A stretch of DNA of 64,000 nucleotides from Bugula neritina (Eukaryota; Animalia; Bryozoa). Both the position numbers and the translations under genes were made by a program. Each line of letters begins with the position of its first letter. The stretch's first letter is position 1. Below the pieces are notes generated by a model that was given only the letters and a program-made list of their open reading frames with translations, was not told the origin of the DNA and searched no databases. Shown piece by piece: positions 10,269-51,800 of the stretch. The DNA lies in the NCBI GenBank assembly GCA_964035545.1, contig OZ037768.1, positions 6,294,741 to 6,358,740 of the forward strand, written 5' to 3'.

Positions 10269-10505
<237 letters not shown>

Positions 10506-23868: not shown

Positions 23869-26310
23869 GCTAATAGTCCGAAAAAAGATCAAACTTTGGC
23901 TATTGGAAATTTTATACGATGAACGACTAATATATCTAGCCTATCATTGACGACCATCTTTTATCTCAGACTAAAGCAGTGCTGAAAAAAGCTACACGGT
24001 TGATTTTGCGGTAAGGAGTGAAGTTGTGCAGCTTACAACTTGTTAGTTAATTCATACTCTTAAAGTCAAACTGATGGACTGTTAAATACTAAAAGCACAT
24101 TTGGTTTGCTTTGATTAATTTTATAGTATATTAATGAAAGCTTTTTTCCCAGTTACCTTTGCCAATATCAATATGAATATGAATAATTAATACGAAATTC
24201 AAATTGAGTAAGTATAACAATAAGTGAATAACTATAACTATAAGTATAACATGAAAATTGACTTTAGTTTTTGAGTAACTGATTAACTCAAGCTGAATAA
24301 CTCAAAGTAAAAGCCACTAACAGTAACAGTAGTACATAACATACAATTTACTTTTACTGTTTTTGTAAAGCTGTTAGTGACTTAGAGTAACTTAGTGTTA
24401 TTGTTAACTTAGTCATCTCTTGGTCTTACCAAATTTTGGTATGGGTACAATTTTAATTTTGTTTTAAAATGATTAGTTGATGTTAATAATAATTATATCA
24501 ATAATACTACCAGCACTTATACTTCTAAGTATTATAATATTAATAATATTATTATAGGTATAGGTGCTAGCAGTACACTACTGGTAGTATTACTATTAGA
24601 AGTAGAAAGTTAAAATAGATGTTTTAATGTAATACTAGTTAGTAGTAGTTGTATCTAATTTTAATTTTTAGTGCTATTACTAGGCTTAAAAATAACAGTA
24701 GAAGAGAGATGCTCATAATGTTATAAATGACAAACTTAATGCATCTGGTCACTTTCAAAATTACTGTAGTCTATGACAGTAACACATTAATAAAAGCATT
24801 ACTATTGGTATTAGTGTGATCACTGCATTTTACTGAGTTTGATATAATTATGACTAGCAAAGAAAAATATATTTATAACAAGATTTCAAATGTAGTAATA
24901 GTCATAGTTGTGATATAATTACGGTTATAATAATAATAGATATGACTTCATACTCATAATACTATGTCAAGTGTTCTAAGTTAATCAGTTATTAGCTTAT
25001 AAATTAGACTCGTAGCATTAGAGTTGGTGAGGTTTTTTTTTACCAAGTTTAATGGTTGAATATTGCTAGTATAAATATAAGTTAGTTGGTAGAAACAATA
25101 TGTTTTATAATATTAATGCGTATTACACCTGCTATTATAGTTATATGAGCATTAGATTAGGCATAAGTTAATAAGTATTATTGAAGAGCTTCAGAGTTAA
25201 TCGTTAGTATAATTTGTCTTGTTTTCATAATTATAAGTGCTACTGTATTAGTAAAACTATGGTACTGGAGGGTCGCCAATTCTAATTATTAGGAATAAAG
25301 TAATCTAACCTATAGTTGAAGTACAAACAAGAATATCAATTTTGAGTGTATGAAAATATGAATTCTGTCATTTTATTTTGCTGGCTATTCAAATTTTTGG
25401 AACCAGTCTTATTCAGTAAAACTTTATAGTAAGCGAACAAGTTGAAATTGCTAAGTGATACCGGAACCAGTTTATTTGAGTAAAATAAATAATAAGTGTG
25501 AGGAGAGGTTGTGCTAAAATTTCTACTCACATAATAGTAGGCCTATACATATAAGGGACACAATCTAGGCACACCAAAGCTATAAAATAAGATGTTTCTC
25601 TGCTTTTTATATAACGATGTTATTAAAGAACATCTTCGAATACTGAGAAAATTGACATGCAACAATGCATAGTAGAGCAGCTGTATAAAGGCAATTAAGT
25701 GTAATGTTGGTGACAAAAGTCTTTTGACATTTAACTGACATTTATGGAGCCGAAATCTGTAACAAAACACACAAGTTTAGGTTTATTTGTAGCAATGATT
25801 TTTGTGAAAGTGGTATGGTTTTTATTATTAAAGATAGAGGCTGTGGCAAGTTTGATACGATGCTTTTGCTGACACCACAGATAGCCAAACTAGCCTAACC
25901 CAACATCTCCAGACTCTTAGTTTCCTTTTATTTTATTTGCTTCGGCGCCACATAGATGAATAAGTCCTTAGCCCACTTCAAAAAAACTCTTTTCATTAGG
26001 GGTTCTCACAGGGATGGCGACTATACCCATTCAAGATGACACCATTAGTTTTTAAAGTTGTTAGTAGTCATCATCTCCAAGTTTGCTTTTTTACATGTTG
26101 TAATTTCTTTAGAGACCTCTAACCTCTCCTTGGATTATCGTTTTTTTAATGAGTACAAGTTTGAAGGAAATGCTATTACATGTATATAGTTGTATATAGG
26201 TATATGTATAATTGTATATATGTATTATTGAGCAGGTAGTCACAGAAAAGTATTGTAATATACACTGAGTAGTTAATACTAGCTAGTAACGCCTACGCTG
26301 TACAACAATC

Positions 26311-29300
26311 ATGTGTGTCAGGAGTTTCATAGTCATCTCCTGCTTCATTTTACTTTGGAGAAAAGGGTATTCAGGTAGGCTATTGTTTTTCCTCACTAGT
26401 GCAGAATGAAAAATCTATTAACAAAAACATCTGCATTGAAATATCTCAATTTATCATATAAAAGTAAACATTCTTCTACAATTAATAGCTTGTACAAGCC
26501 CAGTGTGTTTGTGTGATAAATCTTAAAGACACTGAAATATGAGATACTTGATGGCGATTAGTACAAGCACCCACATAGTGTATGAAGGATTTTTATAGCA
26601 TGTAAATCTGCATATATACATGCTACGTATATTATGTGTCTATTTTTATAATTATTATGCTGTATGCAGTTGGTTAAATGCGTATATTTTTCAAGTATAT
26701 GTATATATGTTGCGGCAAAGTTTTTCTAATTTAACCAACAGTATATGTAGGTTGAATTAATGTACACTAATTAAACTTGCAATATGTGTAGGTTAAATTA
26801 ATTTACATACATTACTGAACCACCTAAACACTATTTATATATGTTACTAGACCAACCATGTAGATGGTTATATTATTTGTGTGAAGTGATCAAAATCGCA
26901 TGTCACATGGTACTGTGATGTTATGAAGTCAATACATTAGAGCATTACTCAGGTTAATTTAAGTTTTCTTGTTTCCTATCACAAGTTATCTAGCTGAAGC
27001 CTGATACTGAGTAGTTACACATTTCATATAACAAACTAAATTTGGTTGTTTTGCCTTTTGTAGAATTTGTTGGCAATGAATGGCCAGGTAACGGAAATTC
27101 CTGGCCAGGTTTGGCTAATTCTGTATATATAATGTATAACAATGGTCCATCCATTCCATATGATGGTCACATTCATGCCTTCCATGCCGACATAGCTAGT
27201 CCTGGAGCTTATATTGAGTTCCAGATATGGCGGGAAGGCAATGTTTCAGGCTCTTACATCCTGATTGGCCAGCAAGGATTCACAACAACGGCAGCAGACG
27301 TTGCTGCCACTAACTCATCAGTAAGTTTGCTGATTAAATTATAGAATACAGATTGCATATGCTCTTTAGTGTCTTGTATTGATATTAATGTGATTGTTTG
27401 GAATAGGTGAATAAGTGTTTATTTAGTATGATTCAAGATGGATGCACCTCACAGCATGGCATGTGTATCAACTTTCTAGGCTGAATATTCATAGCATCTA
27501 TCAAGTCTATATAAATATGCAATCCAGTAAATTTCTGTAGGCAATGTGACACTGGCCTTTCATTGAGCCTGAAGAGATTATTTTGTAAAGTTATATTGTA
27601 TTGTAATTTGAAGGTGGCATAGCATTTACATCACAGCTATGGCTGGTTTATTTTTCTCAGGTTCTACTGGTTATATACTAGTATTATAGTTTTTGACTAG
27701 TGGTAGACTCTGCTGTGTATATAGTATACTATGTAATCATGTTACTAGAAAAAGTTGCGTTATCTGGTTTGAGTACCGTTCGTGGGCCTTAATCATTGTG
27801 ATAGGTTATCTAAAAATAATATATTGTAAATATTTAACAACACTTCTTTCATTAAAAAAACCTGCCATCATATGAAAAAAACTATGTAAATCTGTTGAAG
27901 ATAGTTTCTTTAGAATTTTATAGTACTCTATATTATGGTTACACTGTTGAGCTCCTGATTTTGTTTCTATTTTAGAAATATTGCTATAATATGTGAAATT
28001 TCAGATGTTTTACCAAATTAGTGTCAATTGTAGCACTTCAAAAATTGAATTTCATATGAAATGACTTTAGTGATAGAATTATTCTAATACAATATTTATC
28101 TTTGAAAAATACAGTCATTGATAATGTTTCTGCAATTCTTGCAGTTTTTGTTACCATCCTCAATCGAAGTTAAACAAGGAGATCGAATTGGCTTCTGGAG
28201 TAAAAATTCGGTTGTCCCTGTGGCTAGGTAAGACCTGTCATTACCTGTTGGTTCTGAGATGCACCTGTAATTGTAAAACGCTTCAGTTGCTGCGGTCAAA
28301 ATTATTGATCCTTGCACCACTGTGATATTGGCATTTATTCTTAAGACAGAAATGTGGAAATTTGTTCAATCAATTTGTAATGTTTTTTGCAGATATTTTG
28401 GAGATTTTGTACTTAAAGCATTTGTCTTTAAACAAAGCGCTCAAGCACCAGTGGAAGGAGCTGTTTTGACTCAACTGACCACTTTCAATAAGAACGAGTA
28501 CTTTGCTCTTGGAGTCACTTTGGAGACTCAACCTCTAGTGAGAGAAATGACGACAACAGGACCTACAACTGAAGGACCTAGTAGCACGGTTGCCCCAACC
28601 ACCACAGAACCTGTTCCCACTGACAGAGGTGAGGTGGTGAAAGGCTGAAAGGAAGCTTGTTTATGTTGTCTGTGTGTTGGTGTGATACTTTTGATGAAAA
28701 CTTACAATCAGTCTGTGTTTCTAAATTGTTCAACTTCAGTAATTAGGCTTTAGGAATAAAAATAAGTTCACTCTTTGCTGTAGACTCAGTCAACTTTTTA
28801 ACGAAATGATTTGTCTTTACAGAGTATGGCAGACTGGGACTTGCGGGGGAAGAGTGGCTTGCTGTATCCCAAATCAGCTATCTTTCACTACTCATCAACT
28901 TTACTGAACCTATTATTGGAGGATATTTATCAAGATTTCAAATTTATTCCTTAAAGCGAAATGTCGACATAAAGTTTCAAATCTGGAGAACAATCAGCAA
29001 CACAATTGGCAGTCGAAATTTTCTTCTAGTTGACGAATTGTCGTATACAACAAAACTTGTCAACTCATTTGAAAACACTGTAAGTTTGTTTAGTCTTATT
29101 TAAACTATTTCCTACATGTGAGTTCTGCTCACCAGGCTACTATCTGATATCTTGTATATCTTGTATGTACCTTGATATCTAGTACTTGTATCTGATAGCT
29201 AAGTAGTCTGATCTGTATTTTATATAAATGTGGATAGTAAATTATAGTACGTATTATATTGAACTTCTTTTCCAACCTCAGAGTTCTTCTTAGTGGTATG

Positions 29301-32300
29301 AAACTATCATAATTATATGTGTACTTTGTAATCAATATTATTCATTATAATATTGCTCTTGGATTGTTATTCAATTAAGGCAGTGGAAGTCATCGAAAGT
29401 CATACTTAATCAGCGAAAACTTAATAATTTAGTATTGAAAAGTTTCTAGCAAAGTATTATGTTATATGGAAACTCTATAGGCTGTAGCTCACTGAGTTAT
29501 GATAGAAAATTAGCACTAAGAGATAAAGTCAGTGACAGTCCCAGCTGTTGCTTATATTTTGAAAAAAACGTTTCTGGTGGGACCTCTCGGTAGTTATTCT
29601 CCAAACTTGAGTAATCTAACAGACTAGTTGGTTATTTAATTGATTAGGAGTTGCCAAATTCTAGGAAGGCTCCTTGGCATTTTTAGACGATTTTTTTTTA
29701 AATTGCTTCATTTTTAAGCCATTTTATTATTAAGTAGAGGATTGTTCTTGTAAGATTAGCATCTTTCTTATGTGACGATATTTTTATTGATAACGAATTG
29801 TTCTCTCATAATTCCAGAGTATTTGGAATGCCAACATAATTGACGGAGACTTGATCGGAGTGACTATTATTGATGCTAACAACAAGGGCATTCCTATTGG
29901 CTGGGAACAGGTTACCGGAAATGGAGAGAGAATTTATAAGAAAGCCACACGCACCAAAGCAGAGCTACCCATCATTGGCCGAACGTATATGGACTATGAG
30001 CTGATCAACAACCACAATCAGCTTGCAATGGTTGTCTACATTTCAGATGGTAATAAATAGTCTTGATGGAGGTGTGATGATTTGCTTAGAAATGTCATAG
30101 CAAATAAAACATGTGTGTGAAAACTTCAGACTGGAATGAATTGCTCAAGTGTGGTTATGGTTTGCTTTGTAACTTCTGGTACTTGTCAATAAGCGAGAAG
30201 TTGTGGCAGTTTTTCATGTGTTTAGTGCAGTAAATATGGTTTATAGGCTGGTAAGGTTCATCATTATTGTTATATATTATCCAGCTCTACTCCATTTTGT
30301 TTTGTAGTATTTATGGTTCGATTGTTTTTCTTGTGGTAAATTTGATTTCCAAAACTCTTTATTTTCTTATTCTGTTTCATAGATAAGAAGGCTGATGATG
30401 GGAGTGATAACATAACCCTTACAACCACATCAATGGCCGTCACTACTTCTGGGCCAATACAAAGTACAACTGCAATTACAGAAGGTATATAGCCTTGCAT
30501 TCGTTTCAAAAGATTATTTCCAACATTCTGTTTACGCAGTTTTAGTGGTTTAGTAGAATGTTGATTAAAAATATTGTGTGCACATGTGTAATTGTGTGTG
30601 CAACATGCAAATGTATATGTATGCCTGTGTATATAGATACACTCATATAATTATATATGTGTGCATGTGTGTTTGTCCAAGCACATGAGTGTGTATGAAT
30701 ACACATACTCCTGCAAAACACAATAATACATGTGAGTATGAGTGGGTGTGTAATCTGTAAATATACATATGCATGTATAATAGCTTATAATGTGAATGTA
30801 TCTACTATACACAGGTGTGTATGACTGTAAGTGCAGCTTGTACATTGAATTATTCAGACTTCGCCATAAATTGTTTATCATTTCAGCAGATGGCGTACTG
30901 TTAAGCTTACATGTATTATGCAGTAGTTTCATTGGGTGTTGTGTTTATTACCTACAAAGATAATTAGACTAACATATTCTCCACCTCTACTCTGTGCATG
31001 TAATATGTTGTCATTTCATTAAACTTCTTCACTACAAGTGATTAGTGTATGTAAGTTGGTCGAACGCTGTGTTGTTTATTTGTGTTTGTATTTTAATACC
31101 CCAGGAACAACGGGTACAACAGTTCCCATCACATCAGGTAACATCTTGTGCAATGAGTTCTATACATGTACTAACCTGAACTATATTGCGTCGTTTAACA
31201 TACATATTGTGTACATCTTTCTAAGTGCTATCGAGTGAGTTTCAGCATCAGCTTTAGAATAGAAGTGTTTACAGTGCAAGATACTGATGATATATGCTTC
31301 TCGGCATGCTGCCCGAATTTAGTTGCTGTTTTTTATATGCATAGAATTTTCTTGCATGTTGAAAGACTATGCTGTTAGTTTTGTACTTAGTTTTCAAGAG
31401 TGCCTTAGGATTGATAAAGTTGTAATCTAGTAGGTATTTAGATTCATGACTTATGTAACTTCACAGTTGAATACCTTGTCATAGCACATTCAACATCTTG
31501 CTTATCCCCTAACCCACACGCCTTTGTCAATCACCATTTTTAATTTACCACAAAAAACATGTTAAGGCACAAAATATTTCAAAATTTGAAATCTGCTTTC
31601 CACTGCTCTGAAAATAATGATCAAACACAGAGTAATAGTCTTTTGGAAATATTCTGTTGATTACATCTGCTGTCCCTCCATTACAGAGCTTATAATCGGC
31701 AACAAAGATGTGGTGGACAGTTCTGGCAGTTTGGAAGAGTTCCAACCATTCGCCAGTGTTACTGTAGTGCTGACGGAACTTGAGATGAGGCGCGATGGGT
31801 TTCTCACCAGCATTGGGTGAGCATCTCTCTTGACATTAGACAGCTTCTTGACATTAGACAGCTTCTCGCGGCAGCTATTATGCTTGTTTATTTCTCAAAT
31901 TCAATTATTGACAAAGATATGTATAAATATGCGTACTCCTCACCCTGTTCACTTTAATAGAAGTACAATCAATAACAAAATGATAATGAAACATCATGTA
32001 CAGTGTATTAGCATTCTAATTGTTGCTTCTAATTGGAACTTCCAATTATTTTGCACATTAGATACTCTACATTGTATCTGAAGGTCCACAGTTGGTTATT
32101 TCATTGAGTTTTTGGTTACCCGGAGAAGTGTTGATCTCCAGTATTTTCAACTTTTTACAGGCCGGCTGCTTCATAAACACTATTTGTATCGAGGCATCAT
32201 CATTAGCATTACACTAAGGGTTCATTTAATTTGATAGTACTCGAATGTTTATTGTATAGCATATAATTACGTTTTTAGGATTTATTTGAATTATTTGAAT

Positions 32301-35300
32301 TATTTGAATTATAGAACAATTGTTTGTCTAGATTTTACGCCACCGTAGCTGAACCTTTGGAAGTTGGAATATTCAGACCCATTCAAGCATCATGCCCTCG
32401 GCCAAGATGTTATGAAAAGATATTTACTGAAGACGTGAACATAACTGCCGCTGGACCTGTAATTGTATGTATTGTCTTTATTATACATCCTTCTCCACAT
32501 TGATATAGTGCCTGAATTCGACTGCTAATTCTGTTTGGTACGCAGACTTATCAGTGTAATGCAACCACCCGACTAATTTCAGCCATAGCCTATAAACTTC
32601 ATTTATTTCTGACTGCAGATGGAGTCTTTGCACTCATTTCATATATCTGGAAGTTCAAACATAATAGACAATTTTCAATGAATTTCACTCATCAAAACTT
32701 ATGCGGAGTTATCTCTCTTGTTGAACTGGCATTCTTGGTTGAAATAAAAAAGAAATAGTGTAGCTATGCTATATTGATAACTATAAACCATACTCTAAAT
32801 AAAGCTTATAAAATGATGTGCAATTATATTTAACATTAGCATTTTCTAGTTTAAGAAAATCTGTGCATATTAGGCTATACCCTAACTGCATGTTAATTGT
32901 TAATATTATTAAATTACACAAAACTAATTTTTTGTCTCATTAATTACTTGAAACTATTGCTGATTAATTGCAACTATTTTATTTTTATAAATCAAGCTAT
33001 CTCTGTTATTTTTTAAAAGAAATTGTCAATAAAAATGCTTATTGTACACTCTCATGTTATAGCAATAATAAAAGCACACTGTTGAATTTGTACTATGTTG
33101 ATAAGTAATTGGGGCTGTCACACTATTAAACAGTGTCGCACTGGGCTGCTGTATATACTAAAAGTATTTAAATATTTGACTAACTATTCATAAGCTGATA
33201 AAAATACTCTCTGTTCCGTAGCTGTCATTTGAAGACTCTCCTATTCCCGTGTTAGAAGGTGATGTACTCGGCTTCTACAACACGGACCCTTCATCTTTTG
33301 TTGTGGGTAGAGTTGCTGTCGGCGGCAGTAAGTTCATGTTTTATAGCAATTCTTTCAGCTCTTATTCGAATATAATTTAGAAAATGTATTTTAAATTTAT
33401 TTTTAGTTTTGTGTCGTTTTTCGGCAATAAAACACCATTCAGGTTTATATATTTTCTCATCAAAACCCAGCATGGAAAGTGTATTATAATGTGGTTTACA
33501 ATAGACCATGTAAGTTTGGTACATTTAGTACCTTGTACCAATTCTAGAATACTCACCACTATAACTTATAAAAACTTCTGCAAATTCAAATGCAAAATGC
33601 ATACTTCTAGAAAATAGCTGTGCAACTTTTATTACATGCATTATTTTATTTCATATCTTAAATTTATGAATCATGAGTTCATTTTTCAAAATGTTTAATC
33701 TAAGTGCTTAAAAAATGCAAATAAAAAGTACAAGTTTAAAAAAATACCCTGGTGCAAATTGACCACAGCCCCAGCTGTTTTGGCAAAACACATTTAATGA
33801 CATTTTCATCGACATAGTGGTAAATGGGCTGGTTGTTTTTGGCAGATGGGTAGCACGCTGGCTGGCTGCACCTTTATACAATTCTGATTGGCAGGACTCT
33901 ACATGACCAGCTAATGATTGTATCTGATTGGCCTAATAATTCATTTGCATTTGAAAATGTAGAGTTTTATATAAGTTATAGTGGTGATATTTTAGAGTTG
34001 GTACACACCCCTTTTTTGGTTGAGTTTTATAGTCTGATCACGCTGTAGTCATCTACAACACTTCAGTGTATGGAGAAATTATTAGTATTACGAAATCTGT
34101 TTTGGCTTATATTGCTATGCCAGTTTTCTGACTTGGTTTGTAATAAACCATAGGCAGCTATATAACTTAGGTGATTTCATCGAAGGTAGACACTGTTTAG
34201 GTGCAGCAAATCAAACACTGTTTTTACTATTGCAAAACAGTAGCAATAGCATAGCACAGTCAGCGAACTGTAATGGCAGTGCTGCACCATATTTATCATC
34301 ACTAGCATATATTTACAGCACACTGACGAACACATGTATAAGCATGTGCTAAGCATAAATTAGTTGCTTATGTACCAACCATTATTTTACTTAAAAAAAT
34401 TACAACAGTAATTTTTTTAACTTGGTTGCATATTTATTTGCAGGAGTTAAAATGCCCAGCTTTTAGCAATAGACGTAACATAGACGATTTATATAAAAAT
34501 GAGCTTTAACCTGTAGTGCTTGGCATGCTAGTCTATACTGTTACTTGGTATCATGACCATTTTGTACATAATTTCCTTAGTGAAACAGCATGTTTATCCC
34601 ACAAATGGAATGCCATCAGCCATAGGACAATATAGTTCAGTTTCTTTCAACTATGAAGTGATTTTGTTAGCAGCTTGCTTCATTTTTAAGTGATATTTAA
34701 CAGTGAGCTTCTCAGTCTCAAGTCATTGTTTGAGGAAATATCTGCACCTAGCTCTGAAGCTATACTAATGAGTTTTCAATACATGTTTTTCCTCACTCAA
34801 AGTAATCATCAACCACCATTGAGGCAGGAAGATGACAAAAACATTCTGAGGGCTAGTATCCAATACCATATGCCAGCCATTAAAACTTCACTATAGTGCT
34901 TCCGGAGCACACCTATTTCTACTATACCATGGCGATCTTCCTACAGTATTTACTTATTTCCTGGCCATGCCACCTGGAAAGAAAGGCCATTTTCAACTGA
35001 CTAGAATGCAGTAACTCTAAACTAAATTAATTGCTATCCTTAGAATCCAGGTTAAAAGAGCAATCAACCCATAAAGGGCTTGATATCCTAAATAGTCCTG
35101 GAGGTATAAGCTTACTGTTTGCACCTCTTTTAGAAAAGATTATAATAGTCTGCTGTGCTTTCTGCAGATACCCTTGGTAACCAATAAAATGTAGCACTTT
35201 ACAATATTTTTTTGGTGTGCTATTGTATATGCATGTGCTATACCACTATGCTTTGTAAGCTAAATTCAGATATTAATGGTTTTTGGGTGAAAGAAAATGG

Positions 35301-38300
35301 CAGCTCAGACTCGATGCTTATTTTGCAAAATACAAACTCATATATAGATAATATTCTGTTGGTAACAATGTTGTATGCAGTCAGTGTTGAAATATAATGC
35401 CTTCATTACAGTTTTAGTGGGATCAGCGTTTTCTCTGTAACTATCATGTTGCATCACACAATATGAAAAAATGTTCATCAAATCCAATGTTTAATCATCA
35501 TTTATTCTAGCATATACCAGAGAACCTTTGTATTTTACCCAACTGACTAAAACATGTATTGAAAACTCATTAGTAAAATTGTTGATGTTATTGCGGTAGC
35601 TTCACAGCTAAGTGTAGGCACTCCATCCAGCAATGGTTTGAGGTTGATTATTTCACAGTTAAAAGAATTTAGAGTCTAGATTCTAGACTATATTGTCCCA
35701 TGGCTGATGTCATTACATTTGTAAGATAATCATGCTGTTTCGCTAAGTAAATCGTATACAAGAAAGGGTTATCAACATGGTATTATAGGTGATGATACCA
35801 ACTGGCAATATAGACCCACATGCAAGGCATTACATGTTAATACTAATTTTTATACAAAATGTCTACATTATCTGTGCAATTAAACTCTTGCAGATTAATA
35901 TGTGATTGATTAAAAAAGCTACTGCTATATAAATTTAAAATAAAACAGTAGTAAGTACACAAGCAAGTAATTTATGGTTAGCGTAGGTTCATGCATTTGT
36001 AATATGCATGTGAAGCAATTTTTTAAATTATCACATTAAAATAAGCTGAAGCGCAAAATAATCAGACTATGAGAATGTATTCAGTAATATGCATTGATTT
36101 AAAACTAAATCATGAAATGATAATCATTTTTGCAACTTCTGTACTTGGTAGACAAGATAGAGAGGGGTGGTGTGACTGCTGTAACTGTGTTACTGCTCTA
36201 CATACTAACAGACTAGGCTAGTGTATTGAAGTGCCTTACATAAGATATTTCAATAAAACTGGTGAGTTTAGTGTGGCCACTGCCATTGCAGCTAGGTGAC
36301 TGTGCTAGTGTGCTATGCTCTCACTACTGCTTTGCAATAAAACCAAGTAACAGCACTGGTTGATTTGATGTTCTAAGGTCTAAGTAATGTCTACCTTTGA
36401 TGAAATCACCTAAGTTAGAACAGCCTGCATATAGTTGATGAAAAGCTAAGTCAGAAAACTGGCAAAGCAATATAAGCCAAAACAGATTTCGTAATACTAA
36501 TAATTTCCCCATACACTGAAGTGTTGTAGATGACTACAGCGTGATCAGACTATAAAACTCAACCAAAAAAGGGGTGTGTACCAACTCTAAAATATCACCA
36601 CTATAACTTATATAAAACTCTACATTTTCAAATGCAAATGAATTATTAGGCCAATCAGATACAATCATTAGCTGGTCATGTAGAGTCCTGCCAATCAGAA
36701 TTGTATAAAGGTGCAGCCAGCCAGCGTGCTACCCATCTGCCAAAAACAACCAGCCCATTTACCACTATGTCGATGAAAATGTCATTAAATGTGTTTTGCC
36801 AAAACAGCTGGGGCTGTGGTCAATTTGCACCAGGGTATTTTTTTAAACTTGTACTTTTTATTTGCATTTTTTAAGCACTTAGATTAAACATTTTGAAAAA
36901 TGAACACATGATTCATAAATTTAAGATATGAAACAAAATAATGCATGTAATAAAAGTTGCACAGCTATTTCCTAGAAGTATGCATTTTGCATTTGAACTT
37001 GCAGAAGTTTATATAAGTTATAGTGGTGAGTATTCTAGAATTGGTACAAGCTACTAAATGTACCAAACTTACATGGTCTATTGCTGAGTTATTTATATAT
37101 CAAACAGTAATATGCTATTAATACATATGATGTTATAGATATTTGTGATTCATTCCTATGTTATATATATTATATACCTTTTGGTTATGGTTACGGTCAG
37201 TTCTTTCTATGCTGTCAAGCTGTACACTTTATACATTACAACAATAAACCTTACGTTAAATTATTCTAATGGTCTCATCTTAATTATTACCCACGACAAC
37301 ATACAAAAACTGAAAACATAACAGATAGTAATGTGAGTTATGCAATCTATTTGTAGGAGGAGATGTGCCTTACCTGACTATTGGTCCAACGAATCTAAAT
37401 GAGGTCACTGAAGGGTTTAATCAGTATTTAAATGGCTATAAATATGCTATATATGCTATAATGGCTGCAGGTTAGTGGTCTTGGAATGACTCATGTGTCT
37501 AATCTATACTCTTATTATACGAGCCAATCTACCTTTAACTCTATTGTAATTATTGTGGTTGTACTCTCTTCCAAGTGTGACTCTTCAAAGTTGCTCGCTG
37601 ACATGCCTTACTGATTCAATGGTGGCAGCATCAGTGTCTTCTGATGAGTCATTGATGAAGAATTCTGCTCAATTTATATCATTACACTATGAAAATAGGT
37701 AGAGTGCTAGTAAAAACCAGGCAATAAGCCAATAATATGTGATATTTTATACATGTTCTTTATATATTATTATGGTAGCAGCTTCCCAAAATTATTTATT
37801 TGAAAGTCCCTAACTGCTAATAAGAATATTTATATGTTAGCTGTTTATATTTACTTTGTCAAATGCTTTTGTTAGTTTTTGAAATTTATATGTATATTGT
37901 GTTTTGTTTTGTAGTGCCAACCACAACAACATCTACTACAAGTGAGTCTAAGTACATGTTTATCGTGTTTATTTTACACTTATTATTTATGCAGTAACTT
38001 TTTTCTGCAACCTAATTTTTGCTTCTCTTGAATTAAATGTGAAATATGTAAAATTGCTGTACCTTAACTACATCTGAAATTCGAAAAATTATTAACCATT
38101 TCGCCGTGATTATACTTAGTTTGTTGAGCTGGTGGTGATCTATCAGTAGTTGGTGTGTAGCTATATGAACTGTGAGCATTGCATTCTATATATCTGTGTG
38201 TCCATAGCCACTGTATCAATTCTCTGCTATTATTCTTTTAGACACCTTAAACAGTATGCTATCTGTTGTTTTTTTTTGTTTAATAATTCTTAGTGTATAC

Positions 38301-38829
38301 TTATGAAGCATTCTGCTAAATCGATCAACTTTATAATATGTCTAGAGTATAAACTATAAACTGATGCAATTTTTATTTTTAAAACCTGGGCTAATACTGA
38401 TGATAAGAAATATCGAATATGGATGATCATTGATGAGAAATAAGATCTCAAAAAGTTGTTTATTCAATCACAAGTAGGTTATTTACATGACATCTTTTAT
38501 TTGCTATTAATAGCTACCACACAGACCATACTCATTAAGGGAGTTTCCGGTAATCCAGGATCAGAAGGTCCTGTTGGTTCAATTGGAGCTACTGGAGAAA
38601 AGGGCTCCAAGGTTTGTCTATTTTATAGTAAAGCTATACAGAGAAAATTCTAATTCAGCGCTGTAAATCCTAATAAAGTCATAGATTACTGTAAATTTTC
38701 AATAATAACTTCTTGCAGTATTTACATCACACAGATATGGGATTTAGTTTATGTTGTTGCAACCTTACCTAATAATTAGGAACACAACTGTAATAGTCTG
38801 TTGAATCAAAATATATATTATATTATTAT

Positions 38830-38903
<74 letters not shown>

Positions 38904-41130
38904 TGGTAAAGGATTCTTTCTTTGGTGTAGGGAGCTATTGGACCTACCGGTGCTACAGGTGATAAGGGAGATTTTGGTGACCCCGGAGATCAAGGAGTTA
39001 TGGGCTCAACTGGTGCTACAGGAGAGCGAGGTTCAAATGGTTCAATTGGAGTAGTTGGAGATAAAGGCGAAAGAGGTGCCACTGGACAAATTGGAGATAA
39101 AGGTACAGTTTGTTTATGTGCTTTAGTTACTTTCAAATAAAAATTATTTTTGTGGTGCTTCTAACAATAGAACTGGTGTGCTGTAGGCCTCAAAATTAAT
39201 TGCTATGACTTTTGCTTAAATAGGTTCTTAGTAATGTGTTGAAATAAACTTAACTGAGCTGAGCTTTTTCTTGAATAATGAAGGTGTGAGAGGGGATGTT
39301 GGAGCTACAGGAGAAAATGGTGCAAGGGGAGATCAAGGAGAAAAGGGACAACCTGGTTTGGTCGGACCTGATGGTTTTCAGGGTTTGAAAGGAGAAAAGG
39401 GTGCTCAAGGTATGGTTGTGTAATGGTGAAGGACAATACAGTGTCTGTCTTTATATGTCATATATAGAGTCATGGTATTTTATTACTTAAACAACCTGCC
39501 TATAGATGGGTTTTGGACTTGTTTAAAATAATTTATAAAATGTGTTTGCAATTGTTTGGGTAATTTATTATATATATTTTGCCGTTATGTTGATTCAAAA
39601 ACGTTACTTGGAAACTTAAAAGAGTATTTTAGTAATTTATAGTTTTTGTATGATCACGTTATCTTGAATGATGTAAATATGTTGCATACGTATCCTTGGT
39701 TGCAGGTGACACTGGTTTGGAAGGGGATCAAGGGCCGCCGGGACCAAAGGGTAGCCAAGGTATAACCGGAGACAGAGGAATACCAGCTTTTATTGTGCTG
39801 ACTAATGAGTGTAGTTCACAGTGTGTCGGTGAGAACAACGTCTGCACGGATACTGACCTGTCATTTGAGTGCGGATGTGGTCCGGGCTACACTCTTGAGA
39901 GTGACGGCAGCTGTAAGGGTGAGTGACATCTCAGAAACTTTTATTTCTCAAGCAGACTCTAAAATTTGTATTGTTTTTGTGATTTTAAATTTAGCATTAA
40001 GTATATCGGTTTTTAAAACTGAGTTGAATAGAAAAAATGTTATCATGTATCTTTTTTATTTTAATGCTAAGAGCTGATGAATATACAAGTTATGTATTTT
40101 TTTAAAAAATTGCTAAAACAAATTTACCAGTTATTTGAAAAACTTCTTTGAATTGTCAATTTGCTATTCACTTTGTGTTAGAATGTTTGTGTATAAAGTA
40201 TGTTGGGATATAACTCGTGTGACTGTAGATTTTGATGAGTGTAAGTTACATAACGGAATGTGTCAACAGATATGTAACAACACTCTGGGCTCCAGAAGCT
40301 GTTCATGCTTCGATGGTTACACTCTCTCTCCTAATGCCAGAACTTGTATGGGTAAGTCACATTTTTACACTTGTGCGCATTTGTAGGCTTAAAATTCAAA
40401 ACTGTCATATGGGAGTTGTCTTCTATAAATGATCTTTATATACCGAAAAGCCAGGATCATAAAAAATTCAAAAACTGCAATAATAATATTTATATTTCAA
40501 CCATAATATTTTCAAAGCGAGGTAAGAATAAAATAATGATGAATTCTGGAGCTGATTAGATTTGTCACACTCAATTTCAGACATAGATGAGTGCTTATTA
40601 AACACAGATGACTGTACTAATGGAGAACAGTGTTTCAATGAAGTCGGCACCTTCAAGTGTCTCATCAAACAAACAGTGACAGCAGGTACAAACATTTTGT
40701 ACATACTTTTCAATTTGCTTGACAAAATGGGTAGAATTCATGCATATTCGTAGTTGTAGAGTTTGTCTTGAAAAAGATTCCATTCATCATAAGCCGTCTG
40801 ACAAGTCAATGGTGACTGTTCTAAGTTAAGGTCTCCAGATCATAGTTCTCCATAAGATTCCATTAAGCTCAAATTAACCAGCTTCTTTTAATAATATTTT
40901 TCATTATCTCCATATATTTTATAGCTCAATTGGTTGAAATACAGCAACTTGGAAGTCAGAATTGGTGGGGACTCATTGCTCTGGGTCTCCTTATTTGGGC
41001 AGCTGTGCTGAGTATATCCTGCATTATCTTATGCATAATTCTTTGTGTTGACCACAAGAAAAATAAATCCAGGAAATATCAAGAGAGCTATTATGGCTCT
41101 TCTACTAATGTTGACAATGACAGTACTTAA
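26311..41130 (+). CDS. Uncharacterised type I transmembrane collagen: SP - 3x unknown ~160-aa domain with Thr-rich linkers - (Gly-X-Y)50 - 3 EGF - TM - short tail (~938 aa, 20 exons)
   Basis: Exons 26311-26374, 27064-27320, 28145-28227, 28393-28628, 28823-29079, 29818-30049, 30383-30484, 31105-31137, 31687-31816, 32332-32464, 33222-33327, 37357-37470, 37915-37941, 38514-38611, 38931-39102, 39284-39409, 39706-39918, 40229-40351, 40581-40685, 40925-41130. All are GT-AG, phases are continuous, total 2817 nt. Signal peptide MCVRSFIVISCFILLWRKGYS; cbEGF starts DFDEC and DIDEC; TM WWGLIALGLLIWAAVLSISCIILCIILCV. Confidence 0.85.
33503..37079. mobile_element. Non-autonomous foldback-like DNA transposon, ISL2EU/PIF-Harbinger type, with ~630-bp near-perfect TIRs
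   Basis: Ends are AT|AGACCATGTAAG ... CTTACATGGTCT|AT. 33503-~34133 is the reverse complement of ~36447-37079, with about 8 mismatches by eye. A transposase relic lies inside. Confidence 0.9.
34961..35180 (+). pseudogene. Decayed DDE_Tnp_4 (Harbinger/ISL2EU) transposase C-terminus
   Basis: In frame from 34961: LAMPPGKKGHFQLTRMQ*L*TKLIAILRIQVKRAINP*, then after frame disruption ISLLFAPLLEKIIIVCCAFC. This matches the recalled family pattern LxIPP..KG..Q.....T..IA.LRI.VERAI...IPI.....D.I..VC.AL.N. Confidence 0.7.
38821..38899. repeat. (TAT)n-(TA)~33 microsatellite
   Basis: Read directly; it ends ~30 bp upstream of the acceptor of collagen exon 38931. Confidence 0.95.
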
Positions 41131-48844: not shown

Positions 48845-51800
48845 ATGCTTAGCACTAAGTATCTAGTGCTAATAGCAGTGCTGGTGGCAGCTGCTTTAGG
48901 ACTGGGTCATGATTTAAAAACACTTTTGTTGAGGTACAACGCCAATTGTGATGTCAACCAGCTAACTTGTAAATCCTCCCTCGGAGTTCGATGCTGTACA
49001 GATCCATTGGTAAGATGGTAGCCTACATATACTCCTTGTTGGTAATATATTCATTAACTGTGGTAATGTTAATTGATTTTTTTCAACCATTTCAGGGTGT
49101 ATGTTGTGAAGATGGCCTATCTTGTTGTCCACAAGACTTTTCTTGTGATGAGAAAACCAACACGTGTAAATCGAAGTATGGGGAAACAAAACGCCGTCCT
49201 ACAAGCTTTCCGCAGTCTGCTCTCTCTAAGAACCATCTGGAAAGTACAAACAGTTCTTGCACTACTAAACAGGTGAGCTATACAGACATCATTGTTTATA
49301 ATGGAAATATATTTGGAAGCTCTTTATAGATGCAAGTTGTGACAATTTTGCTAACACAGCGCATCTCATTCTTTATTTCTTCTTGAATTATCTGAAGCTT
49401 TTTTTCCTACTATATTATAACCAAGCTCTTCCCATTCTGTAAAAATGTCATGTAAACTACCACTAAAAAAGCTCTATAACCTGCTCGGAATAAAAAACAA
49501 TAATCTTAATGTTAATGCAGCCTACAGGAGTAAAAAATGTTTTCTTAATTGGCTCAATCATCATTTCAAGGAACTTCAACTCATAAATCTAATGAGAAAT
49601 GAAACTAATAAACTGATAGGAAAGTTTGTACTTCTTATTCGTTGCACTCTGTGTTTATTAATTTGAAGTGAACAAGCATATGGTCAAGTTATGGCTCAAC
49701 TGATATCATGCATATGATTATATATGCTATCTAGTTGTAGAAACTGCAATATTTAAGTAAAACAAATACAGTTTGTGATGCAGTAAAATATTCATCTGGT
49801 GAAAGGTGCAAAATGATGCACAAATTTATAAAAAATATGTTGCCGCCTGTATAACTAAACTTTACATTTCTTTTATCTGAAGAATAAAGTGTTTAAACTT
49901 TTCATGTCTAAAACTGGCAGTGATATGCGAGTTTGATCAATCCAATTGAAATGCATTAGATTCATCAACAAGACATGTATACATTGTTACTTTAGAAGTA
50001 TATTATATGATTGTGGTAAAATAATAAAAAGTTTAAAAGATAATGACTGTAATGGGTTAATTATTTTCTTTAAAATCTGTTGCTATATCAACCAACTGTT
50101 ATTATATACATATTTCTCCCTAAAGGCACTTTTATGCACAGTGTTGTTAATTTATAATTTGTAATTCATGTCAACCAGTAACCACTTTATGCGATATTTT
50201 GCTTGTAGTTGGTAAATATTTTTTTTTCTTCAAAAATAACTAGCAACACGATTAGGTTTGCTAGCTTTTGTCTGACGACAAATTTGTTAAAAAAATTAAA
50301 ATATTATTTGAATGTAAGCAGGGATGTATGACTTGTTGAAGTTTACAAACTAATATTTTCCTAACTCAGTGTAACGGTGAAGAGACATGTTGCCATGATG
50401 ACTGGGATTGCTGTCCTTTCCCAAAGGCAGTGTGTTGCAAAGACAAAGGCCACTGTTGTCCGCATGGCTATATATGTGATGACCAGCCGTTCATTTGCAG
50501 ATGGCCAGTAAGTGCATTTCTCATTTTTGACTTCTTTATGAATATGTGTATTTCACATCAAACATTTTATGCAAAAAAATGCTGTAGATTTATTTTCATA
50601 GACAACATTGTTTGCAAAAAATTATCAATAATTATGTGTGTTAAATTATTGCTAGCTTATTGTAGCTGTGCTAATGCATTGTAGGATGATGGCCATGTTG
50701 TGAAGTCCGAAGTACTACAAAAACAGCCTCAATTGCGTAATGTTGAATGTAATGCAACATTTGAGTGCCCTATGAAAAATACCTGCTGTGTGTTGCCTGA
50801 TGGAGATTGGGGTTGTTGTCCAATGGATTCCGCCACTTGCTGCAGTGATCATATCCATTGTTGTTCTGAAGGAACAACTTGCGATATAGTACATAGCCGA
50901 TGTGTAGCCAAATCTGGTAGGTTTCATTGGTTCTTTTATTTAAAAGATAGGAAGTTGCATGCATAAATTTGAGCTAATACATTCTTAATATTTGTAATCT
51001 AAATGTTGATTGGTTTTAGGACTATCCGTGTTGCCTATGATGGTAAAAAAGCAAGCTTCAAAGCGAATTAGACGACCAGTGAAAGATAATGCGTGCGATG
51101 CAACTCACTCATGTAATGTTGATTATACTTGCTGTAAAATGGAGTCAGGTGAATGGGGATGTTGTCCAACTCCAAATGCAGTATGCTGCGAAGATCATTT
51201 GCATTGTTGTCCGGATGGTTGGGTGTGTCAAAGTGGTTCTGGTGAATGTGCAAAAGGTATGTCTACCATTCCATGGTTGAGCAAAGAGTCCGCAATTGTC
51301 AAGGCTGAGCAAGTTGAAGATGTTCAATGTGACTCCACTCATTACTGTCCTTCAGGAAACACGTGCTGTAAGCTTTCATCTGGTCAATGGGGATGTTGTC
51401 CAGTTCCAAATGCAGTGTGTTGTGATGATCACGTACACTGCTGTCCGTCCGGCTACACTTGTTCGACTGGAACTGGTCAGTGTATGAAAGGTCTGTCTGC
51501 TGTCCCATGGCTGAAAAAAGAGTCCGCAATTGTCAAGGCTCAGCAGGTTGAAGATGTTCAATGTGACTCCACTCATTACTGTCCTTCAGGAAACACATGC
51601 TGTATGCTTTCATCTGGACAATGGGGATGTTGTCCAGTTCCAAATGCAGTGTGTTGTAGTGATCATGTACACTGCTGTCCATCTGGCTACACTTGTTCGA
51701 CTGGAACTGGTGAGTGTACAAAAGGTCTGTCTACCATTCCATGGCTGAACAAAGAGTCCGCAATTGTCAAGGCTCAGCAGGTTGAAGATGTTCAATGTGA

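What the first reader, a model, noticed from the sequence alone, without database searches (positions are those of the whole stretch)
26311..41130. Orphan type I membrane collagen receptor: triple unknown head domains on a 50-triplet stalk with EGF neck
The architecture was assembled from 20 phase-compatible exons: signal peptide, three homologous ~160-aa domains separated by Thr-rich linkers, 50 uninterrupted Gly-X-Y triplets (8+19+14+9), EGF + cbEGF + truncated cbEGF, a long TM and a ~26-aa Tyr-containing tail. Known membrane collagens (MACITs XIII/XXIII/XXV, XVII, class A scavenger receptors, ectodysplasin, gliomedin) are type II, and CCBE1 is secreted with its EGFs before the collagen. A type I trimer presenting nine N-terminal globular heads would resemble a membrane-tethered defence collagen or adhesion receptor. 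I do not recognise a named family.
Basis: partly seen in the sequence, partly recalled or inferred. Interest (0 to 1): 0.8.

Follow-up and report, generated by a model that had tools for sequence, protein, structure and literature searches.

The report
Lectin-headed, tail-anchored membrane collagen gene
A moss-animal-type genome carries a conserved 20-exon gene for a cell-surface protein with three sugar-binding-like heads per chain on a short collagen rod, held in the membrane by its tail end (the reverse of every described membrane collagen); a ribbon worm has the same design, but expression and function are untested.

Summary
A 20-exon model (26311-41130, + strand) has only GT-AG introns, matching phases and no internal stop, and gives 911 codons. 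It encodes a signal peptide, three homologous beta-sandwich heads separated by Thr-rich linkers, and 49 (not 50) uninterrupted Gly-X-Y triplets. These are followed by an EGF, a cbEGF, a 4-Cys half cbEGF, a transmembrane helix and a 26-aa tail.

The gene is not an orphan.
- Genomic contigs of three related species carry the same exons in the same order, and exon 2 looks to be under purifying selection.
- Two RefSeq models from the nemertean Tubulanus polymorphus ("uncharacterized protein") share the whole layout. One has exactly 49 triplets, and both have the half cbEGF and a similar transmembrane motif.
- The collagen-EGF-TM cassette recurs in two genes on the same contig. Earlier notes of this scan describe other type I EGF-collagens on other DNA of this genome.

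The head has no Pfam or PDB sequence match. A confident model (pLDDT 84) is closest to the lectin-like domain of Cwp84 (Z 13), then to phage tail and baseplate domains and carbohydrate-binding modules.

Best reading: a homotrimeric, membrane-tethered collagenous recognition or adhesion receptor with reversed chain polarity. No RNA evidence could be obtained, and ligand and function are inferred.

The parts
26311..26374 (+). Exon 1: start codon and signal peptide (21 codons plus 1 nt)
   Evidence: The ATG, the peptide (1 change) and the GT donor are conserved in the sibling-species contig L004.
27064..27320 (+). Exon 2: first half of head 1, including the FQIWR strand
   Evidence: Profile E = 2e-11. 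15 synonymous against 5 non-synonymous codon differences to L004. Orthologous exons in L018 and L019.
28145..28227 (+). Exon 3: head 1, GD-x-IGF strand
   Evidence: Profile E = 1e-6 at positions 97-117. 74% and 63% identical in L018 and L019.
28438..28628 (+). Exon 4: last strands of head 1 plus Thr/Pro-rich linker 1
   Evidence: orthologous exon in L018 and L019.
28823..29079 (+). Exon 5: first half of head 2
   Evidence: Profile E = 6e-14. BLASTP to exon 2 E = 2e-5. Orthologues at 42-44%.
29818..30049 (+). Exon 6: second half of head 2
   Evidence: Profile E = 1e-4 at positions 101-165. Orthologues at 37-38%.
30383..30484 (+). Exon 7: Thr/Ser-rich linker 2a (phase 1-1)
31105..31137 (+). Exon 8: Thr-rich linker 2b (phase 1-1)
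31687..31816 (+). Exon 9: head 3, part 1 (diverged)
   Evidence: Aligns to profile positions 27-43 but is not significant alone. It is collinear with exons 10-12.
32332..32458 (+). Exon 10: head 3, part 2 (FQIWRP degenerated to VGIFRP)
   Evidence: Aligns to profile positions 49-66 but is not significant alone.
33222..33327 (+). Exon 11: head 3, GD-x-LGF strand
   Evidence: Profile E = 6e-6 at positions 96-118.
33499..37083 (.). 3.6-kb insertion with 659-nt terminal inverted repeats inside intron 11. It accounts for most of the large gap between head 3's exons.
   Evidence: The arms are 98% complementary.
37357..37470 (+). Exon 12: last strands of head 3
   Evidence: Profile positions 147-168, E = 0.07.
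37915..37941 (+). Exon 13: Thr-rich linker 3 (phase 1-1), 602 nt upstream of the first collagen exon
38544..38611 (+). Exon 14: 7 Gly-X-Y triplets
38931..39102 (+). Exon 15: 19 Gly-X-Y triplets
   Evidence: Pfam Collagen 40.2 bits against a cut-off of 27.2.
39284..39409 (+). Exon 16: 14 Gly-X-Y triplets
   Evidence: Pfam Collagen 34.3 bits.
39706..39918 (+). Exon 17: 9 Gly-X-Y triplets (including GPP) plus a 6-Cys EGF
   Evidence: Collinear with P0003 residues 1290-1356, E = 5e-11.
40229..40351 (+). Exon 18: calcium-binding EGF
   Evidence: EGF_CA 32.4 bits and FXa_inhibition 43 bits. Aligns to P0003 residues 1363-1400.
40581..40685 (+). Exon 19: truncated cbEGF with 4 Cys
   Evidence: EGF_CA profile positions 2-29 of 43. 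The same 4-Cys module sits before the TM in P0003, P0018 and a paralogue.
40925..41130 (+). Exon 20: juxtamembrane stretch, TM helix, 26-aa cytoplasmic tail and stop
   Evidence: One Trp and two Leu positions in the TM are invariant across the two nemertean proteins and two paralogues.

Best explanation
One gene encodes a type I (tail-anchored) membrane collagen. Three chains zip into a triple helix of about 42 nm (49 triplets). The helix stands on an EGF-cbEGF-half-cbEGF neck directly above the membrane. At the outer end each chain carries three lectin-like beta-sandwich heads, spaced by Thr-rich and probably O-glycosylated linkers. A homotrimer would therefore show nine heads. It most likely works as a multivalent, low-affinity but high-avidity binder of glycans or other surface polymers on microbes, mucus, matrix or neighbouring cells. 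In geometry this makes it a membrane-tethered counterpart of the defence collagens and class A scavenger receptors, but with the chain running the other way. Shown here: the exon model, the domain grammar, conservation in relatives, the cross-phylum architecture and the fold class of the head. Inferred: trimerisation, folding started from the C-terminal, membrane-proximal end (the GPP triplet lies near that end in all three proteins), surface location, ligand class and biological role.
For: Gene model: 20 GT-AG exons with consistent phases and no stop. Exons 1 and 2, with their splice sites, are conserved in a sibling-species contig, and exon 2 shows 15 synonymous against 5 non-synonymous codon differences. 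Exons 2-6 are collinear at 37-74% identity in two more distant species. Single protein: Tubulanus models XP_074651551.1 (7 heads) and XP_074650029.1 (4 heads) join heads, collagen, EGFs, the 4-Cys cbEGF, the TM and a tail in one CDS. Window exons 17, 18, 19 and 20 align to them in order. Helix length is conserved: 49 uninterrupted triplets in the window and in P0003, and 25+6+16 triplets over 148 residues in P0018. The apparent gap between heads and helix lies inside head 3 and is caused by a 3.6-kb insertion with inverted repeats. Head fold: AlphaFold2 pLDDT 84 and pTM 0.80, all beta. The best matches are the Cwp84 lectin-like domain (Z 13.0-13.4, rmsd 2.6-3.0 over 140-142 residues), then phage capsid, tail-tip and baseplate domains (Z 10-12), N-terminal domains of carbohydrate and polyvinyl-alcohol esterases (Z 9-10), and CBM32, CBM6, F-lectin and discoidin domains (Z 6-7). 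Language-model features point to PF18560 Lectin_like twice. Context: the same head occurs in a transcript-like contig encoding a signal peptide, 4 heads and a TM, and at the end of mollusc-type astacin-ApeC-CUB-Kringle-C-lectin-Sushi proteins. Head number varies (3, 4 or 7), with near-identical tandem copies in Tubulanus. No furin-type dibasic site lies between the EGFs and the TM.
Against: The nemertean models are computational and lack signal peptides. Fold similarity is at 6-13% identity, so it shows neither homology nor sugar binding, and Foldseek found no PDB hit at E <= 0.001. The cytoplasmic tail is not conserved between the window and the nemertean proteins and carries no motif I recognise, so 'receptor' in the signalling sense is unsupported. 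Proline is scarce in the helix, with roughly ten Pro in 98 X/Y positions by my count of the exon translations. Exons 9 and 10 of head 3 are not individually significant.
Confidence: 0.55

Rival explanations
1. It is a structural tether rather than a recognition receptor. The protein would anchor epidermal or other cells to an extracellular polymer layer (cuticle, chitinous ectocyst, mucus or basal matrix), with the heads acting as polymer-binding modules and the collagen rod as a spacer of fixed length.
For: The head resembles polymer- and carbohydrate-binding modules of esterases and CBMs. Rod length is held at 147-148 residues across phyla, as expected for a spacer. The tail is short and not conserved. 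The same genome holds several other tail-anchored EGF-collagens (scan notes).
Against: The full architecture also exists in a nemertean, an animal without a cuticle (own knowledge). Variable head number and near-identical tandem head duplications fit recognition or avidity tuning better than a fixed tether. There are no localisation data.
Confidence: 0.25
2. The locus holds two genes: a secreted three-head mucin-like lectin (exons 1-13) and a separate collagen-EGF-TM gene (exons 14-20) with an undetected first exon.
For: There is no RNA evidence. If the donor of exon 13 is not used, the frame runs on about 17 codons to a stop, so a heads-only product is conceivable. In Tubulanus a heads-only model (XP_074651552.1) lies 1.26 kb upstream of the full-length one.
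Against: Exons 12 and 13 lie 0.6-1.2 kb upstream of exon 14, and phase 1 is kept across the junction. Two independent nemertean loci join heads to collagen in one CDS. Exon 14 starts inside a codon, and I saw no obvious start exon for a second gene between exons 13 and 14 when reading the frames.
Confidence: 0.1
3. It is a decaying or silent gene copy with no present function.
For: No transcript was found. Head 3 is strongly diverged and interrupted by a young 3.6-kb insertion in its intron.
Against: All 20 exons are open and all splice sites canonical. Exon 2 shows about 3:1 synonymous to non-synonymous changes against a lineage that is 89% identical. Exons are conserved at 37-74% in distant relatives. 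The insertion is intronic.
Confidence: 0.05

Closest known systems
Tubulanus polymorphus uncharacterized proteins XP_074651551.1 (LOC141906210) and XP_074650029.1 (LOC141905155)
   Same: The whole layout matches: FQIWR-type heads in tandem, a helix of about 49 triplets, EGF and cbEGF modules, the 4-Cys half cbEGF, a TM with the same invariant Leu and Trp positions, and a cytoplasmic tail. Window exons 17-20 align to them in order.
   Different: They have 7 and 4 heads instead of 3. Identity is only about 30-45%. The tails are unrelated. P0018 has two short helix interruptions and an extra EGF-like module. They are computational models without signal peptides, and nothing is known of their function.
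Class A scavenger receptors and CL-P1/COLEC12 (SR-AI, MARCO)
   Same: Trimeric membrane proteins with a collagenous stalk that hold globular recognition heads away from the cell surface (own knowledge; the type II statement is in PMC7848082).
   Different: They are type II (N-terminal anchor, C-terminal heads) with SRCR or C-type lectin heads and often a coiled coil. Here the anchor is C-terminal, the heads are N-terminal and unrelated in sequence, each chain has three heads, and the neck is made of EGF modules.
Soluble defence collagens (collectins, ficolins, C1q)
   Same: A collagen stalk with multivalent lectin-type heads, where avidity comes from trimerisation (own knowledge).
   Different: They are secreted, have one C-terminal head per chain, and use different head folds (C-type lectin, fibrinogen-like, C1q). 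Pfam finds none of these here.
MACIT collagens XIII/XXIII/XXV, collagen XVII, ectodysplasin, colmedins
   Same: Collagen triple helices attached to a membrane anchor.
   Different: All are type II (PMC7848082). MACITs have interrupted helices and furin shedding sites. The window protein has an uninterrupted helix, a C-terminal anchor and no dibasic site near the membrane.
CCBE1
   Same: It combines EGF/cbEGF modules with short collagen repeats.
Lectin-like domain of Clostridioides difficile Cwp84 (PDB 4ci7, 4d59; Pfam PF18560)
   Same: It is the best structural match of the head: Z 13.0-13.4, rmsd 2.6-3.0 A over 140-142 of 163 residues. It is also a lead from protein language-model features.
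   Different: Identity is 6% and Pfam gives no hit to PF18560 at E <= 1. It is a bacterial surface-layer protein, and shared ancestry is not shown.
Choanoflagellate collagenous lectin ChCL
   Same: A membrane protein that combines a short collagen domain with a lectin-type domain (bioRxiv 10.1101/2021.10.08.463732).
   Different: Its TM is N-terminal (type II-like), it has one C-terminal ConA-like lectin/glucanase domain, a collagen domain of about 50 aa, and no EGFs.

Membership tests
Unnamed type I 'head-collagen-EGF-TM' family (Tubulanus XP_074651551.1 type) | Tandem N-terminal FQIWR / GD-x-(I/L)GF beta-sandwich heads | tested here: met
   A profile without window rows hits exons 5, 2, 3, 11 and 6 at 6e-14 to 1e-4. 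The big search linked the window exons to these proteins.
Unnamed type I 'head-collagen-EGF-TM' family (Tubulanus XP_074651551.1 type) | Collagen helix of about 147 residues directly followed by EGF modules | tested here: met
   49 triplets in the window, 49 in P0003, and 47 over 148 residues in P0018. Exon 17 aligns across the collagen/EGF junction of P0003.
Unnamed type I 'head-collagen-EGF-TM' family (Tubulanus XP_074651551.1 type) | 4-Cys truncated cbEGF immediately before a C-terminal TM with conserved Leu and Trp positions | tested here: met
Unnamed type I 'head-collagen-EGF-TM' family (Tubulanus XP_074651551.1 type) | All parts present on one mRNA | not testable with these tools
Only gene-model logic and the nemertean models support it.
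MACIT / type II membrane collagens | N-terminal cytoplasmic domain and signal-anchor TM with a C-terminal ectodomain | tested here: not met
   N-terminal cleavable-type signal peptide and C-terminal TM with a basic stretch after it. The definition is from PMC7848082.
MACIT / type II membrane collagens | Interrupted triple helices and a furin-type shedding site | tested here: not met
   49 uninterrupted triplets and no dibasic RX(K/R)R-type site between the EGFs and the TM.
Class A scavenger receptors / collectins | SRCR or C-type lectin head C-terminal to the collagen, with a coiled-coil neck | tested here: not met
   Pfam finds no SRCR or Lectin_C in any exon. The heads are N-terminal and the neck is made of EGFs.
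CCBE1-like | Secreted protein with EGF/cbEGF modules N-terminal to the collagen repeats | tested here: not met
   The EGFs follow the helix and a TM ends the protein.
Pfam PF18560 Lectin_like (Cwp84 type) | Sequence match to the family profile at or above its cut-off | tested here: not met
   No hit at E <= 1 for the window exons or for 25 family heads. No PDB sequence hit.
Pfam PF18560 Lectin_like (Cwp84 type) | Same fold | tested here: met
   Z 13.0-13.4 over 140-142 residues, the top of 48,161 representative chains. The model is of a nemertean head, not of the window's own head.
Collagen triple helix (Pfam PF01391) | Gly-X-Y repeats scoring above the gathering cut-off | tested here: met
   Exon 15 scores 40.2 bits and exon 16 scores 34.3 bits against a cut-off of 27.2.

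The most novel reading that the evidence does not exclude
Bryozoans and nemerteans share an old, undescribed class of tail-anchored (type I) collagenous surface receptors. A new lectin-like head domain is displayed in multiple copies on a rod whose length has been held at about 49 triplets since the two phyla split. The triple helix is nucleated from the membrane-proximal EGF/TM end. This would be a convergent, reversed-polarity counterpart of vertebrate class A scavenger receptors and collectins.
Probability: 0.35. Interest if true: 0.75.

Novelty: new variant of a known kind. Interest (0 to 1): 0.6.

Why it matters
Every membrane collagen and collagen-like membrane protein in the review I read is type II, with its globular part at the C-terminal end (PMC7848082). 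A conserved family with the opposite polarity would show that the 'heads on a collagen stalk on a membrane' design arose at least twice. It would also raise a concrete folding question: what brings three chains into register when the anchor and EGF neck lie at the C-terminal end? In addition, this gene defines an unannotated extracellular domain (FQIWR / GD-x-IGF, about 150-170 aa, lectin-like jelly roll). That domain is present in bryozoan, nemertean and mollusc proteins, and it could be added to domain databases and tested on glycan arrays. The exact conservation of helix length across phyla gives a simple, testable structural constraint.

Tried and rejected
- **Self-comparison.** A tblastx self-comparison of 26-38.5 kb found no internal repeats, because the heads are too diverged.
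- **Pfam on head exons.** Scanning the head exons one by one found nothing.
- **Own-genome searches.** Searches with single head exons, the EGF exon and the TM exon found only themselves or weak EGF hits, so there is no close paralogue.
- **Word-based protein searches.** Exon 2 found only one 99-aa genomic fragment. The two nemertean proteins found only themselves. These blanks say little, because the tool needs shared 5-mers and similar lengths.
- **Structure and PDB sequence searches.** Foldseek against PDB gave no match at E <= 0.001. A profile of 25 heads against PDB sequences gave nothing.
- **RNA evidence.** I did not try further and read laying was not used.
- **Run and assembly accessions.** SRR4020082, SRR25569789, SRR31840193, SRR3401642 and GCA_964204645 occur in no paper of the library.
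- **Rejected family memberships.** MACIT, class A scavenger receptor, collectin and CCBE1 were rejected because defining features fail.
- **Exon 19 as a full cbEGF.** I considered a missed exon that would complete it. I saw no C-x-C...C candidate in the frame listing of 40686-40924, and the same 4-Cys form occurs in the nemertean proteins and a paralogue.
- **Joined protein left out.** Every exon was searched by reference. The structure model is therefore of a homologous nemertean head, not of the window's own head.

Full report
**Setting.** The window is AT-rich (about 32% G+C). It lies on contig C4 of a 216-Mb, 321-contig assembly. Earlier notes of this scan call the genome Bugula neritina, a bryozoan. 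I did not verify the name, but it fits the data: related exons occur in several unnamed sequencing runs, and one contig is 89% identical at the DNA level.

**Observation.** I listed all open stretches and all AG/GT sites around them and rebuilt the gene.
- The result is 20 exons from the ATG at 26311 to the stop at 41128-41130. All introns are GT-AG, all phases are compatible, there is no internal stop, and the total is 2736 nt.
- Exons 7, 8, 12, 13 and 16-19 are phase 1-1, the usual class for shuffled extracellular modules.
- One correction is needed. The only acceptor of exon 14 that fits the phase left by exon 13 is at 38544. The triplets are therefore 7+19+14+9 = 49, not 50.
- Pfam supports Collagen, EGF_CA/FXa_inhibition and a truncated EGF_CA (profile positions 2-29 of 43) above their cut-offs.

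Each exon was sent by reference.

**Are the exons real and conserved?**
- A word search with exon 2 returned a 99-aa fragment from run SRR4020082. Its 1.5-kb contig is genomic and collinear with 26022-27406 at 89% identity.
- In that contig the ATG, the signal peptide (one change), both splice sites of intron 1 and the donor of exon 2 are kept. Exon 2 shows 15 synonymous against 5 non-synonymous codon differences. This indicates purifying selection.
- The exhaustive profile search found many exon-sized fragments. Two of their contigs (L018 and L019, from two further runs) carry orthologues of exons 2, 3, 4, 5 and 6 in the same order at 37-74% identity. In L019 the introns are only about 150-250 nt.

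The case rests on three points.
- *Position of the gap.* The large gap between the heads and the helix is not between domains. It is intron 11, inside head 3, and it holds a 3.6-kb element with 659-nt inverted terminal repeats that are 98% complementary. The last head exon and a 27-nt Thr-linker exon lie only 1.2 and 0.6 kb upstream of the first collagen exon, and the phase is kept.
- *Nemertean models.* The profile search found two RefSeq models of the nemertean Tubulanus polymorphus: XP_074651551.1 (1531 aa, 7 heads) and XP_074650029.1 (1134 aa, 4 heads). Both have heads, Collagen, cEGF/FXa_inhibition, EGF_CA, a TM and a tail in one CDS. Window exons 17, 18, 19 and 20 align to them in order.
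- *Shared details.* The first nemertean protein has exactly 49 uninterrupted triplets. The second has 25+6+16 triplets spanning 148 residues. Both have the same 4-Cys half cbEGF just before the TM. One Trp and two Leu positions in the TM are invariant.

These nemertean proteins are computational models without signal peptides, so the support is strong but not final.

**The head domain.**
- Pfam has no model for it, either for the window exons, for the foreign proteins or for 25 isolated heads at E <= 1. A profile finds nothing among PDB sequences.
- The family is nevertheless clear. An in-session profile found 7, 4, 3, 4, 4 and 3 copies in six long proteins. The conserved motifs are FQ(I/V)WR, L(I/V)G, GD-x-(I/L)GF and a final (Y/R)-x-FS strand.
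- A profile built without any window sequence recognises window exons 5, 2, 3, 11 and 6 (6e-14 to 1e-4). It places the weak head 3 exons 9, 10 and 12 in the correct order. Head 3 is therefore a diverged third copy.
- AlphaFold2 on a nemertean head with the 25-row alignment gave an all-beta model (pLDDT 84, pTM 0.80).
- Foldseek found nothing at E <= 0.001. The exhaustive aligner did better:
  - lectin-like domain of Cwp84: Z 13.0-13.4, rmsd 2.6-3.0 A over 140-142 residues;
  - phage capsid-decoration, tail-tip and baseplate domains: Z 10-12;
  - N-terminal domains of carbohydrate and polyvinyl-alcohol esterases: Z 9-10;
  - PHR domains: Z about 8;
  - CBM32, CBM6, F-lectin, discoidin and SUN domains: Z 6-7.
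- The Atlas shape search found bacterial surface proteins (TM by query up to 0.79). The feature search twice pointed to PF18560 Lectin_like.
- At 6-13% identity this shows a fold class, a lectin-like jelly roll typical of surface-polymer binders. It shows neither ancestry nor a ligand.

**Where else the parts occur.**
- *Heads.* The head also occurs in a transcript-like contig (ORF 80-2974 of 3142 nt) that encodes a signal peptide, four heads, an acidic Ser/Pro stalk, a TM and a tail, without collagen. It occurs three or four times at the C-terminal end of astacin-ApeC-CUB-Kringle-C-lectin-Sushi proteins, one of them from the gastropod Babylonia areolata. At least two other loci of this genome carry it.
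- *Anchor cassette.* Following a lead from scan note s1-457175, I fetched 40 kb at C4:2.914-2.954 Mb. Two minus-strand genes there have collagen exons, EGFs, an exon 19-like half cbEGF (E = 1e-5) and terminal TM exons with the same Leu and Trp positions.
- The window gene is therefore the lectin-headed member of a wider type I EGF-collagen family. Earlier notes of this scan describe that family on other DNA of this genome, and I tested one of those notes in part.

**Mechanism.**
- *Shown.* The parts and their order are established.
- *Inferred from established collagen knowledge.* An uninterrupted 49-triplet Gly-X-Y run rich in KGE/KGD-type charge pairs should form a trimer about 42 nm long (0.286 nm rise per residue). 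No close paralogue was found, whether in the window or in the rest of the genome, so a homotrimer is the simplest case. The GPP triplet lies within the last seven to nine triplets of the helix in all three proteins. This is where fibrillar collagens nucleate C-to-N folding, so I propose that the EGF neck and TM bring the chains together at the membrane and the helix zips outward.
- *Consequences.* Thr-rich linkers are typical O-glycosylated, stiff spacers. A trimer would display nine heads, which suits avidity-based binding to repetitive ligands.
- *Tail and shedding.* The tail is not conserved and has no motif I recognise, so signalling is not supported. No furin-type site suggests shedding.
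- *Role.* I rate a recognition or adhesion role as most likely and a structural tether role second.

[quoted passage not shown] The choanoflagellate collagenous lectin ChCL also has an N-terminal TM (bioRxiv 10.1101/2021.10.08.463732). The window protein works, by geometry, like a class A scavenger receptor or a membrane-bound collectin, but it fails every defining feature of those families (see the membership test). It belongs to an unnamed family whose database members are all labelled 'uncharacterized'.

**Verdict.** This is a real, conserved gene with an unusual but not unique architecture. The 'orphan' label is wrong, while 'no named family' is right. Function and the single-transcript claim remain to be shown.

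Noticed in passing
window 33499-37083 (intron 11): A 3.6-kb element is bounded by 659-nt terminal inverted repeats that are 98% complementary, with 44-nt sub-repeats inside each arm. It is probably a young DNA-transposon or foldback insertion.
   Followed up: partly
G000:C2:8135592-8135993 (-) = L010; G000:C5:954343-954564 (-) = L013: Two further loci of the same genome encode the FQIWR-type head. The C2 copy has almost the whole domain in one 175-codon open frame. I saw no collagen or EGF exons within 10 kb on either side.
   Followed up: partly
L025 (Tubulanus polymorphus OZ123230.1:9164451-9194371): The heads-only model XP_074651552.1 (666 aa, 3 heads, no signal peptide) ends 1.26 kb upstream of the full-length XP_074651551.1 on the same strand. 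The latter itself starts inside a head. The two may be one gene with ten heads.
   Followed up: no
P0013 (Logan contig) and P0020 = XP_076465481.1 Babylonia areolata: Large astacin-ApeC-CUB-Kringle-C-type lectin-Sushi proteins end in three or four copies of the same unannotated head domain.
   Followed up: partly
L024 (run SRR3401642, 3142 nt): A transcript-like contig encodes a signal peptide, four heads, an acidic Ser/Pro-rich stalk, a TM and a Tyr/Ser-rich tail, with no collagen. This is a second type I architecture for the head domain. The organism is unknown.
   Followed up: partly
G000:C4:2916492-2934250 (-) = L020-L022: Two neighbouring genes have collagen exons, EGFs, a half cbEGF and terminal TM exons that share the window gene's TM motif. 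This is the locus of scan note s1-457175.
   Followed up: partly
window 38805-38906 (intron 14) and 10322-10490: A long AT-rich microsatellite (about 100 nt, reading as alternating Tyr/Ile codons) lies between collagen exons 14 and 15. A TG/CA dinucleotide repeat of about 150 nt lies at 10.3-10.5 kb.
   Followed up: no
window 51020-56872: The G+C content rises to 0.47 over a long open exon. Another note of this scan reads it as a 24-module granulin. I did not examine it.
   Followed up: no
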